NCBI GenBank assembly: GCA_977016875.1
Contig: CDRNST010000062.1
Coordinates: 4,154,001 to 4,218,000, forward strand
Source of the DNA: Pavona decussata
Lineage: Eukaryota
Direction of reading: 5' to 3'
Length of the DNA stretch: 64,000 nt
The position numbers and the translations under genes are program-made. The notes under the pieces are model-generated. The model was given only the letters and a program-made list of their open reading frames with translations. It made no database searches and was not told the DNA's origin. Shown here piece after piece: positions 31,915-54,400 of this stretch. Each line of letters starts with the position of its first letter. Position 1 is the first letter of the stretch.

Positions 31915-34900
31915 TCATGTTACCTCATAAAATACTTCAATATCACTCAGAGTAAAAGAGTAGCTTCCAGCAAACCACGTACATGAACGTCTTGACGAAT
32001 ATCCTGAGGGAATTGCATAGGCGTAGCCACAATAGGTGTGCCCTCTGTTACTTGCTGTGTAGATGTCGTGCCCGTTACCAAAGGTCGGGCCATAACTGCT
32101 AGAATCGTATATGGCGGAATTATGATGTCCTGACTTGAGCCCAAGCTTAAGAGGATGGTAACTGTAGATGTTGTACAGCGAGTAGAGAAATGCTGTACTG
32201 GAACTTCTGTAACTTGAAGCTGGAAGAAAGATAAACATGTTTTACATTGAAAAAGGAATCGAAAAAATAGATAACTAAAAAAAACTATAATACGATGATC
32301 TGTGCATGAGCACGAACCCCACTGGTCACCGTAAAAAACAAATTTGTACCGTCTAACTACTCATTCACCGAAGGTAGTTGACTATCCCTTCATACCACAG
32401 GTTAGCAAACCGCTGCCGAGAGCTTCTACATGTTATATCCCTATGACCAGAACGATAATACTTACCACTAGCCCAAGAGACATCTGTATATCCGCCAAAT
32501 ATGTAACTGCCGACTCTGATGATAGTAACAGTGGGTCCCTGTCTATCACATTTGCTATGGAATGTCGAGGACGCCCAGCCATGCGTAGAGGCCCGCCAAC
32601 ATAACACAAACCTACTACGGGCTGAACTCTGAAGTACTGGGTTCAAATATGAAATCAACTGGTCCACATACGAGCTACTCTTGGGGCTGAGAATGCTGGA
32701 TGTAGAGAGGCCACCTAAACGAAAGAAAAATTTTAAGGAGCAGGTTAAGTAGCAGTCTTGTCTCTAGCCGGGAATTTAAGATGATGGATTCGAAGTTGTC
32801 GTTCAACGCTCTCTAATTTCAAAATAAGAACATTATTATCCTGTAGCTATACATATTTGACCCTGAAGAGGATGTTTTGTTGCGGGCATGAAAACAGGCA
32901 GTGGTAACTCACGACCTTCAGGTAGGTGGGTGGCCCACTCTCAAACGCTGGACTTCCTTCTCTTTGTGAAACAAAATATCTCGGAGCCTCGACTCTACGG
33001 GCCTCGGTTTGGTGTAAAAAAAATAAGCCTGATGGGGAGGGGGTGGGGAGAGGAACCTTCCTTTGATCCACCAGCGAAAGGGATAGATGGTTTGAACAAA
33101 AAGCCTGTTATTGCGGGGAGACAATATCTAGTAAAGTGCAGTTTCGGGTGCATTTAACATGTCATGATGATATGCCTTTCTGTAAATTGGTTAATGACAT
33201 GTTATTTGCACTATTTACTTGACCACAGCATCAGCCGATCACCGCGATTAAGAGGAAAACTCACGTTTATATACGCAGTAGTGTCCGTTTCCATGATAGT
33301 TTGACTGACAAGCACAGCTGTAAGACCCCACGGTGTTTGTGCAAACGGCGTTCGCGTGACAATTGTGCGAGCCACTTGTACATTCATTGACATCTGAAAA
33401 TTTTGTTACATCGAAACAAAACTACTCAATGTCATGTTTGAATGTTTATCACATCATAACACAACTCATTATCTGATACCAGTACAAGACACTGCACTGA
33501 AACGCATGCGCTAGAGGATTTCCACGCATGCGCATAGCTCATTACCCTCAAATATCCTAATGTGAATAATTGTACAGCTGCCTTATTACGCAATTGCATA
33601 AATGCATATTTGTTAACTTGGTCCACGCAGCAGTGATTAAATTTTTTCTTAGGTAATCCTCGTTTTCAGTTTCACTATGGTTATCTGTAAATACCGTTGA
33701 GTAATATTGTGTGATTGCAAAAATACGCATTTTCGTATGCAATTGTACTGAACAAAGTTGTTTTCTTAAATCGTTTTAAAATATGTTCATTAGATTAGAA
33801 CAGTTTTGAATTGATCATGAGGGTGGAAAGTTAGTTCGCTTTTGTTATGGTTTTGCTTTACGGAGATCTTTGATTGGTTAGCAAAACTCGCGCTACTTTC
33901 TCAACAGATGAGAAGAAAAACCACCATTAACCAATCGCGACTTGTCCGTACTCGTTTTACCGTGTTTAACACCATTATAGTTACATGTATTTACTTTGAG
34001 TTCCGATTGGTTTATTGTATTTTTTTTTTATTTAAACATATTTTATTGTCAAAGTTTGCCCCAAGAGAAAAAAAACTCATCGAGAGGGCTCATTAACGCC
34101 TGTAGTGATTACTTCACGATACTCAATGAAAAAAACTGCTCTATTATACCATTTACATCGTCGTCATCATCACCATCATCATCATCATCATCATCATTAT
34201 TATTTCTACATGTACGAAAAGTCGTACCATTACATCAAATAGTATCCTATGAGCTGTTACCACAAGCAAAAGAACTCTTCCATTTCTTACCGCTGCAAGT
34301 TTTTCCATTTCCAGTAAAACCGGGTTTGCACGTACAAACATAGGAACCGATATTGTTAACACAATTGGCTTTGGCGTGACAAACTGCAGGAGAAGCGCTA
34401 CATTCATCAATGTCTGAGGAAAAACAATAGTAACAGACACTGAGTTAGTTCTATACACACACACACACACACACACACAAAAAAAAATTGCTAGGCTTTT
34501 TGAAACCGTATATGCTGACAGAAAACATCACGATTTTAGTTGGTGAACCTGTTACATGTTTTTTCTTTTCTCTTATAGTCTGTTTACAGGATTTCGTTCG
34601 TTTAACCTCATAGAAGAATAAAAGTAACTTTCTCTTGTTGATTAAGATACAGTCCATTATTAGTAGTAATAAATGAGCTACGATCGCAGTTAAGAACGAA
34701 AATCAGTGACTGTGATTGTCTCATTTATTTATTCTTTTATCCACTGTTCAAATATATGAACTGCATACACTCCACTTCCATCCCGGAGGTATGATAGGAA
34801 TTCACAAAATGACCAGCTTCCAGTTGGCTTGATAGCTCAGTTGGTAGAGATGATGTATCGTTATCACAGGGGCCATGGGTTCGAATCCCTTTTAACCCTG

Positions 34901-51428: not shown

Positions 51429-54400
51429 TCACGTTACCTCATAAAACACTTCAATATCACTGGGAGTAAAATAGGACTTTCCAGCAAAAAACGCACATCG
51501 ACCAGATGAAGAATACCCTGGGGGGAGGGCATAGGAGTAGCCGCAAGAGGTGTGGCTATTGTATATCTGACTGTTAGGGTGTATGTAGATTCCGTGTCCT
51601 CTACCAAAAGCCGGCCCACGATCACTTCTTCTGTATGTGGCGTATCTATATTGTCCTGATTTGATCCGTAGCTTAACAGGATTGTACCTACGGTTGTAGT
51701 TGTACAGCGAGTAGATAAAGGCTTTACTGGAATAGGTGTAACCTGAATCTGGAACAAAGATAAACACGTTTTACACCTACATGGTATAACTAAAAAAAAT
51801 CTAAATGATTTAATTACTTTGGGTTAAGAAAAAAAAAAACAAAAAAAAAAAAAAAAAACAGGACATTCAGTTATTTATAAGAACATTTTTCAGATGGGAA
51901 ATTACAAACCCCAGTCCTTAAAAAATATAGTCGAGCACCACCATTGAGACTGTAGAGTAGACTAAAAGTAATCGTGTTTTATTCCACAATTGGAAAAATA
52001 ACTGAAGAATTATTGTCTTGAGTTAGTGCACGCTAGCTGCACAAGTAGCTTACTGAGGAAAACACAACAAGATAAGTGATAATTTAATAATCAAACTAAA
52101 GTGGAAAAGTGACGGGATGAAGAGCAAAGCCGGATACTTACTACTAGCCCAAGAGACATCTGTATATCCGCCAAATATGTAACTGCCGACTTTGATGATA
52201 GTAACAGTAGGTCCCTTTCCATCACATCTGCTATGGAATGTTGAGGACAGCCAGCCATGCGACGAAGCCCGCCAGCATAACAAAAACCTGCTACGGACTG
52301 AGTTACGAAGTACTGGGTTTAAATATGAAATCAACTTGTCCACATACGAGCTACTCTTGGAGACGAGAATACTTGATGAATAGTAGAGGCCACCTAAACG
52401 AGACAAAAATTTTAAGGAGAGGTTAAGGTGATTCCGCTGAAAAAGAAGGAGTATTTAAAATTGTCTAAGACTTGGTCCAGTTCATGACTATGTTATGAGC
52501 ATTACAAAAATGCAATAAAAAATGGGGGTCACCGTGCTCGTTTTTGTGCAACCTGGATGGCTATTATAGTAAATAGATGACCCACGAGGTTTATATTAGG
52601 AACGCTAGTAATCAGAAAAAGGAACTAACATTTCTAGAAAAATTAATTTCTTGCATAAAAATATCGAAGCAGTTCAACAAAATCTACTTTAATCTTACAC
52701 AACAAACTATTTTCATTGAACTGGAATTAAAACTATGAAAGAAATTAAAGATTTTGCTGTGTGCACGTAAGCAGCACTACCTAAATATGTGCTTTTTAAA
52801 GCATTCAAATAAAAGTATCTCATAGTAGAGTATTAAACTTTTCTTTAAATCGCGATATATAGTGGTCAACCGTATGACATTTAAATTGATTCATTAAAAA
52901 ATGGGGGTCACCGTGCCCGTTTAGAAGAAAAGGACCATTTATTTTCCTGCCGAGCTTAACCTCAATGAAATCCCGTAATGTTGTGCGCGCGCGCGCTCGT
53001 GCGCGCGCTAAATGACGCGAAAAATTATGGGCAGCAAGGATGCGCAATGCAATTCGATGGAATCACCTGAAGTAACAGCCTTGTCTCTACCTTGGAATTT
53101 AAGATGATGGATGCGACATTGTCGTTCAACGCCCTCTAATTTCAAAATAAGAACAGTATTATCCTGTAGCTATACTTATTTGACCCTGAAGAGGAGGTTT
53201 TGTTGCGGACATGAAAACAGGCAGTGGTGACTCACGACCTTCAGGTAGGTGGGTGGCCCACTGTCAAACGCTGGACTTCCTTCTCTTTGTGAAACAAAAT
53301 ATCTAGTAGCCTCGACTCTACGGGCCTCGGTTTGGTGTAAAAAATAAGATGGGGCGGGGGTGGGAAGAGGAACCTTCCTTTGATCCACCAGCGAAAGGGA
53401 TAGATGGTTTGAACACAAGCCTGTTATTGCGGGGAGACAATATCTAATAAAGTGCAGTTTCGGGTGCATTTAACATGTCTTGATGATATGCCTTTCTGTA
53501 AATTGGTTAATGACATGTTATTTGCACTATTTACTTGACCACGGCAGCAGCCGATTACCGCGATTAAGAGGAAAACTCACGTTTATATAAGCAGTAGTGT
53601 CCGTTTCCATGATAGTTTGACTGACAAGCACAGCTGTAAGACCCCACGGTGTTTGTGCAAACGGCGTACGCGTGACAATTGTGCGAGCCACTTGTACATT
53701 CATTGATATCTGAAAATTTTGTTACATTGAAACAAAACTGCTCAACATCATGTTTGAATGATTATCACATCATAACACAACTCATTATCTGATACCAGTA
53801 CAAGATACTGCACTGAAACGCATGCGCCAGAGGACTTTCACGCATGCGCATAGCCCGTTACCCTTAAATATCCTAATGTGAATAATTGTGCTGCTGCCTT
53901 ATTACGCAATTGCATCAATGCATATTTGTTAACTTGGTTTACGCAGCAGTGATTAAATTTTTTCTTAGGGGATCCTCGTTTTCAGTTTCACTATAGTTAT
54001 CTGTTAATACTGTTAGTAATATTGTGTGATTGCAAAAATGCGCATTTTCGTATGCAATTGTACAACAACGTTGTTTCCTTAAATCGTTTTAAAAAAATGT
54101 ATATTAAATTAGAACAGTTTTGAATTGATCATGAGGGTCGTAAGTTAGTTCGCTTTTGTTATGGTTTTGCTTTACGGAGATCTTCGATTGGTTAGCAAAA
54201 CTCGCGCTACTTTCTCAACAGATGAGAAGCAAAACCAACATTAACCATGCGAACGCGAAGTCGCGAAGTCGTACCATTACATCAAATGATTATTCTATGA
54301 GCTGTTAGCACAAGCAAAAGAACTCTTCCATTTCTTACCACTGCAAGTTTTTCCATTTCCAGTAAAACCGGGTTTGCACGTACAAACATAGGAACCGATA

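What the first reader, a model, noticed from the sequence alone, without database searches (positions are those of the whole stretch)
31915..52393. Constant N-terminus, hypervariable TLDc tip: signature of diversifying selection
Manual A-versus-B alignment: exon 1 differs at 3/107 aa, exon 2 at 0/50, matched EGF exons at 1-3 aa, the first TLDc exon at ~16/84, and the last TLDc exon is only ~58/106 identical. The nearby intron (32760-33900 vs 53080-54230) aligns visibly better than this coding exon. Changes cluster between conserved core motifs ([69 protein letters not shown]), and B gains Arg/Tyr. Inference: a variable recognition surface, as in immune, allorecognition or toxin families.
Basis: partly seen in the sequence, partly recalled or inferred. 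Interest (0 to 1): 0.8.

Follow-up and report, generated by a model that had tools for sequence, protein, structure and literature searches.

The report
Fast-evolving tip on secreted coral TLDc
In a tandem family of stony-coral genes for secreted PAN-EGF-TLDc proteins, about a quarter of the codons in the last exon change amino acids several times faster than neutral DNA, but the sharp contrast between copies A and B also arises because that exon sits in an older, recombined-in block.

Summary
Between A and B, amino-acid differences are 3/107, 0/49, 1/40, 3/42, 15/83 and 42/100 from exon 1 to the last exon.

- In the last exon (T2), dS (0.355) is as high as dN (0.329).
- The non-coding DNA next to T2 is as diverged as T2 itself (74% against 73.5% identity).
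Upstream introns have p=0.117, so the T2 block is about 3x older.
- T2 forms two old lineages (A-type, B-type), and segment trees disagree: B, C and D carry an A-like body, T1 included, joined to a B-type T2.

Positive selection on T2 is nevertheless real:
- My codon site models give M1a/M2a 2dlnL=53 (p=3e-12), with omega about 5 at about 25% of codons.
- The result holds within each lineage, in each half of the exon, and without gap columns.
- It is absent from exon 1.
- Within the A-type clade, dN (0.216) exceeds dS, intron and flank divergence (0.11-0.13).

The domain has a confident TLDc fold, and extracellular modules precede it. Not tested: whether the sites form one face, transcription of T2, and any ligand. 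This scan noted the same pattern before in a lectin-TLDc family of this genome (s1-501657).

The parts
40055..40376 (-). Gene A exon 1: start codon, signal-peptide-like hydrophobic N-terminus, PAN/apple domain (107 codons + 1 nt)
   Evidence: Pfam PAN_1 E=1.8e-6. Borders. Nearly invariant protein in 13 copies. M0 omega 0.24, no positive selection.
39324..39473 (-). Gene A exon 2: 50-aa 'SCKEIK' module, like the start of a fibrinogen-related or fibrillar-collagen C-terminal domain
   Evidence: AG/GT borders. Weak COLFI hit, E=0.055. 0 amino-acid changes between A and B.
33265..37941 (-). Gene A's four calcium-binding EGF exons: 37819-37941, 36367-36489, 34291-34413, 33265-33393. The first two come from a 1452-bp tandem duplication.
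   Evidence: Pfam EGF_CA/EGF_3 E about 1e-12. Borders. Duplication 35320-36777 against 36775-38229 at 98%. A contig of run X4 matches 36367-36489 exactly and leaves the genome at both exon ends.
32466..32714 (-). Gene A exon T1: linker plus the N-terminal half of the TLDc domain
   Evidence: Pfam TLD 48.4 bits, E=1.4e-12. A-B dN/dS 0.47. M2a weakly better, p=0.01.
31915..32219 (-). Gene A exon T2: the C-terminal half of the TLDc domain plus the stop codon. This is the hypervariable exon.
   Evidence: Pfam TLD profile positions 82-167. The frame is open in 12 copies. Spliced Montipora and Acropora proteins show the same T1-T2 junction. Site models.
31960..32169 (-). Span of A's T2 that holds the ten codons with posterior >0.95 for omega>1. 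In A's T2 they are residues 19, 33, 39, 53, 56, 62, 65, 76, 78 and 86.
   Evidence: NEB posteriors under M2a. Most map to DSSP loops of the homologue model.
51429..51748 (-). Gene B exon T2 (B-type lineage, 105 codons)
   Evidence: In the T2 tree it groups with C, D, P30, P31 and P25 at 100/100 support.
52142..52393 (-). Gene B exon T1. It is A-like in sequence although B's T2 is B-type. The recombination junction is inferred near its donor site.
   Evidence: In the T1 tree B/C/D sit with P17 (93/95), and P30+P25 stand apart (100/100). B's T1-T2 intron is B-type: 89% identical to P30.
53581..57073 (-). Gene B 5' part: E1 56752-57073, E2 55887-56036, EGF 54339-54461, EGF 53581-53709 (two EGF exons only)
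31741..31914 (-). 3' flank of A's T2, alignable to B 51248-51428 at 74% identity. It is the neutral yardstick for the T2 block.
32715..33264 (-). It is 92-94% identical to B's and belongs to the younger 5' block.
1..171 (-). 5' 171 nt of exon 1 of gene C (B-type copy). The rest of the gene lies left of the window, at C62:4148532-4154171.

Best explanation
The window holds part of a tandem array of stony-coral genes for secreted proteins. Their layout is signal peptide, PAN, a short SCKEIK module, 2 to 8 calcium-binding EGF repeats, and a TLDc domain split over two exons (T1, T2).

T2 encodes the C-terminal half of the TLDc beta-sandwich. An invariant core (including two invariant cysteines and the [10 protein letters not shown] end) alternates with patches in which about a quarter of the codons take amino-acid changes about five times faster than synonymous ones.

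T2 exists as two old lineages, A-type and B-type, each present in both arrays. Recombination or gene conversion has moved the conserved 5' body between them. Copies B, C and D carry an A-like body, T1 included, joined to a B-type T2 with its own intron and 3' flank.

The A-B contrast is therefore the product of three things:
- a T2 block about 3x older than the rest of the gene;
- strong purifying selection on the PAN, SCKEIK and EGF exons;
- recurrent positive selection on T2 patches.

Shown here: the gene structure, the fold, the mosaic history and omega>1.

Inferred: the variable patches form a ligand-binding surface of an extracellular TLDc, on a constant scaffold, that tracks fast-changing partners (microbes, symbionts or non-self tissue).
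For: Architecture and fold:
- Pfam finds PAN_1, EGF_CA and TLD.
- Spliced coral homologues join TLDc to PAN/EGF, Ig or collagen modules.
- AlphaFold2 model of the closest spliced homologue: pLDDT 96.
- Foldseek matches TLDc structures 4acj, 6r82 and 8ar6 at TM 0.67-0.83.

Selection on T2:
- M0 omega 1.27.
- M1a/M2a 2dlnL 53.1, M7/M8 54.1, M8a/M8 53.0.
- A-type clade alone 15.4 (p=5e-4). B-type clade alone 37.6 (p=7e-9). Gap columns removed 41.6.
- Each half of the exon on its own tree: 14.9 and 40.3.
- 16 simulations under M1a gave at most 5.7.
- Exon 1 control: 0.05.
- A-type clade tree: dN 0.216 against dS 0.127, intron 0.122, 3' flank 0.106.

Mosaic history:
- A-B dS is 0.04-0.06 in E2 and EGFc (0 in EGFd), 0.21 in E1 and T1, and 0.355 in T2.
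- T2's flanks have K80 0.31-0.32, against a pooled upstream-intron p-distance of 0.117.
- Trees of T2, T1 and E1 disagree.
- T2 data reject the T1 grouping, AU p=7e-8.
- B against P30 shows the reverse contrast.

Family size: at least 148 TLD matches in this genome.
Against: - No RNA contig covered T2 in the four runs laid. Transcription and the T1-T2 splice of these copies rest on homology to spliced NCBI models of other corals.
- The site models are my own implementation. Relative branch lengths were fixed from M0, and only 10-11 distinct sequences were used. Some are pseudogenes (A2, P31).
- Gene conversion is active in the family and can inflate such tests, although the subclade and half-exon runs argue against that.
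- T1 and E1 data reject the T2 types only weakly (AU p=0.11 and 0.066).
- Selected sites are not enriched in DSSP loops (12/69 against 5/37).
- No coordinates were available, so 'one face' is untested.
- Nothing shows binding, location or an immune role.
Confidence: 0.6

Rival explanations
1. Mosaic ancestry alone. T2 is simply an older exon block that evolves neutrally, or nearly so, while the 5' part was homogenised by gene conversion. There is no adaptive diversification.
For: - For A against B, T2 dN 0.329 is about equal to dS 0.355 and to flank K 0.31-0.32.
- Upstream introns are about 3x less diverged.
- Segment trees are discordant.
- P18 and P19 share a nearly identical upstream intron (K 0.002) while their exons differ.
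Against: - Neutral drift cannot give 35-45% of codons with omega near 0 beside about 25% with omega about 5.
- Within the A-type clade, dN is 1.7-2.0x the three neutral proxies.
- The frame is open in all 12 T2 copies.
Confidence: 0.15
2. Two-function split. A-type and B-type T2 diverged in one early adaptive burst after duplication, and each is now conserved for its own fixed ligand. Selection was episodic, not an ongoing arms race.
For: - There is a deep, fully supported A/B split in T2.
- An A-type T2 is present in a second assembly, L055, at 83% nucleotide identity. Types may therefore persist across species.
Against: - Positive selection is found separately inside each lineage.
- The same columns vary within both lineages.
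- Pairs within the A-type have dN/dS 1.1-3.1.
Confidence: 0.15
3. Relaxed constraint or decay. The array is degenerating and T2 is losing function.
For: - A2 has a stop codon in exon 1.
- A3 is cut off inside T1.
- P31 has a broken T1.
- T2 was not seen in RNA contigs.
Against: - A, B, C and D have open frames in E1, E2, T1 and T2 and the EGF exons align full-length; a complete open reading frame was checked for A only.
- The core motifs and both cysteines are invariant.
- M2a beats M1a, which already allows a neutral class.
Confidence: 0.05
4. Artefact: a wrong exon model, a wrong alignment, or assembly copies taken for paralogues.
For: - B, C and D are 98-100% alike and could in part be assembly duplicates.
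- T2 has indels between the two types.
Against: - The same T1-T2 junction is present in spliced NCBI proteins of Montipora and Acropora.
- The result stands with gap columns and their neighbours removed and with the identical copy D left out; C and A2 (each one nucleotide from B or A) stayed in.
- The TLD profile runs on from T1 to T2.
Confidence: 0.05

Closest known systems
Intracellular TLDc proteins (OXR1/Oxr1p, NCOA7, TBC1D24/Skywalker, mEAK-7), binders and regulators of the V-ATPase
   Same: Same fold. The model of the coral homologue matches 4acj, 6r82, 8ar6, 7obp, 7une and 7fde at probability 1.0, TM up to 0.72/0.83. The Pfam TLD profile is matched over its full length across T1+T2.
   Different: - Only 11-18% sequence identity.
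- Here a signal-peptide-like N-terminus and the PAN and EGF modules precede the domain.
- It has four family-conserved cysteines.
- It sits in large tandem arrays (at least 148 TLD matches in the genome).
- Patches evolve under positive selection.
- By my own knowledge, the known members are cytosolic, few per genome and conserved.
Diversified secreted recognition families of invertebrates (snail FREPs, amphioxus VCBPs, sea-urchin Sp185/333, Hydractinia Alr) - compared from my own knowledge
   Same: - Tandem arrays that include pseudogenes.
- A constant scaffold with one variable domain.
- Exon or block shuffling and gene conversion.
- omega>1 in patches of the variable domain.
   Different: The variable domain here is TLDc, not a fibrinogen, Ig or lectin domain. 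No somatic diversification, expression response or ligand is known.
Annotated but unstudied coral proteins: XP_068752406.1 (Montipora capricornis, PAN-EGF-TLDc) and XP_044164951.1 'hemicentin-2-like' (Acropora millepora, collagen-Ig-TLDc)
   Same: Same TLDc subtype (46-76% identity to the modelled domain). XP_068752406.1 has the same PAN-EGF-TLDc order.
   Different: The best T2 identity to A among the spliced NCBI models examined is 67%. The Montipora protein lacks the SCKEIK exon and has one EGF. No paper in the held library deals with them.
Lectin-TLDc tandem family of the same genome (earlier scan note s1-501657)
   Same: That note reports a hypervariable last TLDc exon on a constant secreted scaffold. 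This is an AI note that I did not check.
   Different: It concerns a different N-terminal scaffold (lectins and Kazal) and a different locus.

Membership tests
TLDc domain (Pfam PF07534) | Profile match above the curated cut-off | tested here: met
   T1 alone scores 48.4 bits (cut-off 24.5). T2 alone scores 19.8-21.4 bits and continues profile positions 78/82-167. Spliced homologues score 55-73 bits over positions 4-167.
TLDc domain (Pfam PF07534) | TLDc beta-sandwich fold | tested here: met
   AlphaFold2 model of homologue P0003:30-224: pLDDT 96.1, pTM 0.92. Foldseek top 15 hits are all TLDc structures. The window's own joined T1+T2 was not folded.
V-ATPase-regulating TLDc proteins (OXR1/NCOA7/mEAK-7 type) | Cytosolic location, with no signal peptide or extracellular modules | tested here: not met
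   Exon 1 starts with a hydrophobic signal-like segment followed by PAN. EGF_CA repeats follow. No signal-peptide predictor was available, so this is by inspection.
V-ATPase-regulating TLDc proteins (OXR1/NCOA7/mEAK-7 type) | Binding to V1 subunits of the V-ATPase | not testable with these tools
Diversifying secreted recognition gene families | Codon sites with omega>1 concentrated in one domain | tested here: met
   T2: 2dlnL 53, omega2 5.3 at 25% of codons. E1: none. T1: weak.
Diversifying secreted recognition gene families | Tandem multigene array with birth and death of copies and sequence exchange | tested here: met
   Six copies on C62 and seven on C46, including three pseudogenes. Segment trees are discordant.
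Diversifying secreted recognition gene families | Variable residues form an exposed binding surface | tested here: inconclusive
   12 of 17 sites with posterior >0.8 lie in DSSP loops, but this is no enrichment (p=0.78).
Diversifying secreted recognition gene families | Binding of non-self ligands, or induction by challenge | not testable with these tools
   The RNA contigs showed only an EGF exon and T1 fragments.

The most novel reading that the evidence does not exclude
Extracellular TLDc is an unrecognised variable recognition domain of corals. Old alternative last-exon lineages, each still diversifying under positive selection, are shuffled by recombination onto a constant PAN-EGF scaffold. 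This gives the animal a repertoire of secreted binders for microbes, symbionts or non-self tissue.
Probability: 0.3. Interest if true: 0.85.

Novelty: new variant of a known kind. Interest (0 to 1): 0.62.

Why it matters
TLDc has been studied only as a cytosolic module that binds the V-ATPase. Here the same fold is attached to secreted scaffolds, expanded to at least about 150 matches in one coral genome, and evolving with omega about 5 in patches. That points to a second, extracellular role and to a candidate coral recognition repertoire.

Coral immunity, symbiont choice and allorecognition lack well-defined variable receptors. This family gives concrete, testable candidates.

The case is also a caution. 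The naive contrast of a constant N-terminus against a variable tip was inflated about threefold by mosaic ancestry.

Tried and rejected
I used the +-1.5 kb loci returned by the genome search instead, so EGF exons of most C46 copies were not analysed.
- Word search with T2: it found only two unspliced ORF fragments. One came from the same assembly, 100% identical over 20 kb. The other came from a second assembly, L055.
- Full branch-length optimisation of the site-class models timed out. Relative branch lengths were fixed at the M0 estimates with one free scale.
- RNA support: contigs of four runs covered repeats, one EGF exon and parts of T1, but not T2. This shows neither presence nor absence of T2 transcripts.
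- AU tests of T1 and E1 data against the T2 types: p=0.11 and 0.066, so not decisive.
- Loop enrichment of the selected sites: none.
- Is the C46 array the other haplotype of C62? A 4-kb right-flank probe found only repeats and no C46 match. Unresolved.
- Literature: three searches found no paper on secreted or cnidarian TLDc in the held library.
Exons were searched one by one by reference, and the fold used a database homologue.
- The N run at 20382-20532 was left alone.
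Full report
WHAT IS THERE

The window is C62:4154001-4218000 of a 602-Mb genome. Earlier scan notes call it a stony coral, and the nearest annotated proteins come from Montipora and Acropora. The genes lie on the minus strand.

I defined gene A from open frames and AG/GT sites. All introns are in phase 1, and the joined frame is open (508 codons, read inside a script only). Its exons are:
- E1, 40376-40055
- E2, 39473-39324
- four EGF exons, 37941-37819, 36489-36367, 34413-34291 and 33393-33265
- T1, 32714-32466
- T2, 32219-31915

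Pfam finds PAN_1 in E1, EGF_CA in the EGF exons, and the TLD profile split over T1 (positions 10-85) and T2 (82-167).

Gene B has the same plan with two EGF exons:
- E1, 57073-56752
- E2, 56036-55887
- EGF exons, 54461-54339 and 53709-53581
- T1, 52393-52142
- T2, 51748-51429

THE ARRAY

On C62 the copies alternate between two types:
- A2: A-type, with a stop codon in E1 and a 35-kb gap among its EGF exons.
- C: B-type.
- A.
- B.
- A3: A-type, cut off after 119 nt of T1.
- D: B-type.

B, C and D are 98-100% alike. A, A2 and A3 are about 99% alike.

A second array on C46 holds seven more copies:
- A-type T2: P17, P18, P19, P20.
- B-type T2: P31 (T1 broken), P30, P25.

The genome has at least 148 matches to the TLD profile, many in other arrays.

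A-B amino-acid differences and NG86 values:

| Exon | aa differences | dN | dS | dN/dS |
|---|---|---|---|---|
| E1 | 3/107 | 0.012 | 0.213 | 0.06 |
| E2 | 0/49 | 0 | 0.063 | 0 |
| EGFc | 1/40 | 0.011 | 0.039 | 0.27 |
| EGFd | 3/42 | 0.030 | 0 | not defined |
| T1 | 15/83 (+1 gap) | 0.099 | 0.212 | 0.47 |
| T2 | 42/100 (+5 gaps) | 0.329 | 0.355 | 0.93 |

The excess of replacement changes in T2 over E1 is far beyond chance (p=1.6e-18).

WHY THE A-B CONTRAST OVERSTATES THE CASE

For this pair that is what I find.

- The non-coding DNA that touches T2 is as diverged as T2. The last 55 nt of the T1-T2 intron are 74.5% identical, the first 173 nt of the 3' flank 74.0%, and the exon 73.5%. K80 is 0.31-0.33 for all three.
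- The rest of that intron and the farther flank no longer align.
- The four upstream introns together have a p-distance of 0.117 over 3121 sites. That is lower than T2's synonymous p-distance (p=4e-4).
- So T2 and its flanks form a block about three times older than the body of the gene. The well-aligning intron belongs to the younger part.

Trees say the same:
- T2 splits into A-type and B-type with 100/100 support.
- T1 puts B/C/D with P17 inside the A-type copies (93/95) and sets P30+P25 apart (100/100).
- E1 mixes the types.
- T2 data reject the T1 grouping (AU p=7e-8). The reverse tests are weaker, at p=0.11 and 0.066.
- B's T1-T2 intron is of the B type (89% to P30's), while its T1 is A-like.

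I infer that B, C and D are recombinants. They carry an A-like body, T1 included, joined near the T1 donor site to a B-type T2 block.

A recent conversion tract is also visible between P18 and P19. Their upstream intron has K 0.002, while their exons differ by 4-6%.

POSITIVE SELECTION IS NEVERTHELESS PRESENT

An exon-wide omega near 1, together with invariant motifs, already implies omega>1 at the variable sites.

I wrote a Goldman-Yang type codon likelihood with F3x4 frequencies. Branch lengths were fitted under M0 and then scaled. On 11 T2 sequences it gave:
- M0 omega 1.27.
- M1a against M2a: 2dlnL=53.1 (p=3e-12). The classes were 35% at omega 0.03, 40% at 1 and 25% at 5.3.
- M7 against M8: 54.1. 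M8a against M8: 53.0.

The signal survives these checks:
- Restriction to the A-type clade: 15.4 (p=5e-4).
- Restriction to the B-type clade: 37.6 (p=7e-9).
- Removal of gap columns and two neighbours on each side: 41.6.
- Splitting the exon in halves, each on its own tree: 14.9 and 40.3.
- Sixteen data sets simulated under the fitted M1a gave at most 5.7.
- Controls: E1 gives 0.05 (M0 omega 0.24). T1 gives 9.2 (p=0.01, M0 omega 0.68).

A check that does not depend on site classes points the same way:
- In the A-type clade, summed dN is 0.216. Summed dS is 0.127, the T1-T2 intron 0.122 and the 3' flank 0.106.
- In the B-type subset, dN is 0.234, dS 0.173 and the flank 0.150.

Ten columns have posterior >0.95. 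They fall in patches between the invariant motifs, two of them just before the second of two invariant cysteines.

FOLD AND RELATIVES

A profile-free search with A's T2 found 1177 proteins at E<=1e-3. Among those I examined were spliced coral and sea-anemone models in which this TLDc subtype follows PAN-EGF, Ig, collagen-Ig or TRIM modules. They show the same T1-T2 junction as my exon model.

The closest spliced one (Montipora XP_068735669.1, 67% identical to A's T2) was folded with 53 aligned homologues. The model has pLDDT 96.1 and pTM 0.92. Its Foldseek hits are the solved TLDc domains.

Twelve of the 17 sites with posterior >0.8 lie in DSSP loops, but T2 is mostly loop, so this is not an enrichment.

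A second assembly (L055, ERZ26692694) carries an A-type T2 at 83% nucleotide identity. Its dN/dS against the A-type copies is 0.66-0.96.

WHAT IS NOT SHOWN

Contigs of four RNA or RNA-like runs gave only two things:
- one contig that matches EGF exon 36367-36489 exactly and leaves the genome at both exon ends;
- fragments in T1.

None covered T2. Secretion is inferred from the N-terminal sequence and the extracellular partner domains. The ligand and the role are unknown.

VERDICT

- The reading 'diversifying selection on the TLDc tip' stands, but on different evidence from that offered.
- The A-B contrast is inflated by an old, recombined last-exon block.
- The kind of evolution is familiar from invertebrate recognition families. 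TLDc as the secreted variable domain is, as far as the held literature shows, undescribed.
- This scan already noted the same pattern in a lectin-TLDc family of the genome (s1-501657).

Noticed in passing
window 35320-38229: A 1452-bp tandem duplication (98% identical) copies one EGF exon together with its intron. EGF number differs among copies: B/C/D have 2, A has 4, A3 has 5 and A2 has 8.
   Followed up: partly
window 2-6087 versus 56904-63056: About 6 kb is 98.4% identical at a spacing of about 56.9 kb. It is part of a segmental duplication that carries a B-type plus A-type gene pair. It could also be an assembly duplicate.
   Followed up: partly
C62:4138092-4138413 (L007) and C62:4223162-4231320 (L009-L010): A2 has a Trp-to-stop change in exon 1. 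A3 ends after 119 nt of T1 and has no T2. On C46, P31 has a fragmented T1. The array therefore holds pseudogenes.
   Followed up: partly
window 51874-51978 (-), and the same place in P30 and P31: B-type T1-T2 introns keep a 35-aa open stretch whose FSLLYSLN resembles the start motif of T2. It may be a relic of a duplicated last exon, or chance.
   Followed up: no
window 39486-40068 and 56157-56768: The E1-E2 intron holds tandem units of about 106-111 nt, 62-88% alike to the reference copy. Similar sequence sits on dozens of other contigs. It is a dispersed repeat or satellite.
   Followed up: no
window 39324-39473 (-): Exon 2 (the SCKEIK module) looks like the first 40 residues of a fibrinogen-related or fibrillar-collagen C-terminal domain (Pfam COLFI E=0.055). 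It is invariant between A and B and almost so among all 13 copies. It may be a stub left by domain loss.
   Followed up: no
C46 loci L018-L020, upstream of T1: P18 and P19 share an almost identical EGFd-T1 intron (K 0.002; P20 groups with them in the tree), while their T1 and T2 differ by 4-6%. This is a recent gene-conversion tract.
   Followed up: partly
window 20382-20532: A run of 151 N inside the long spacer between copies C and A. Left as it is.
   Followed up: no
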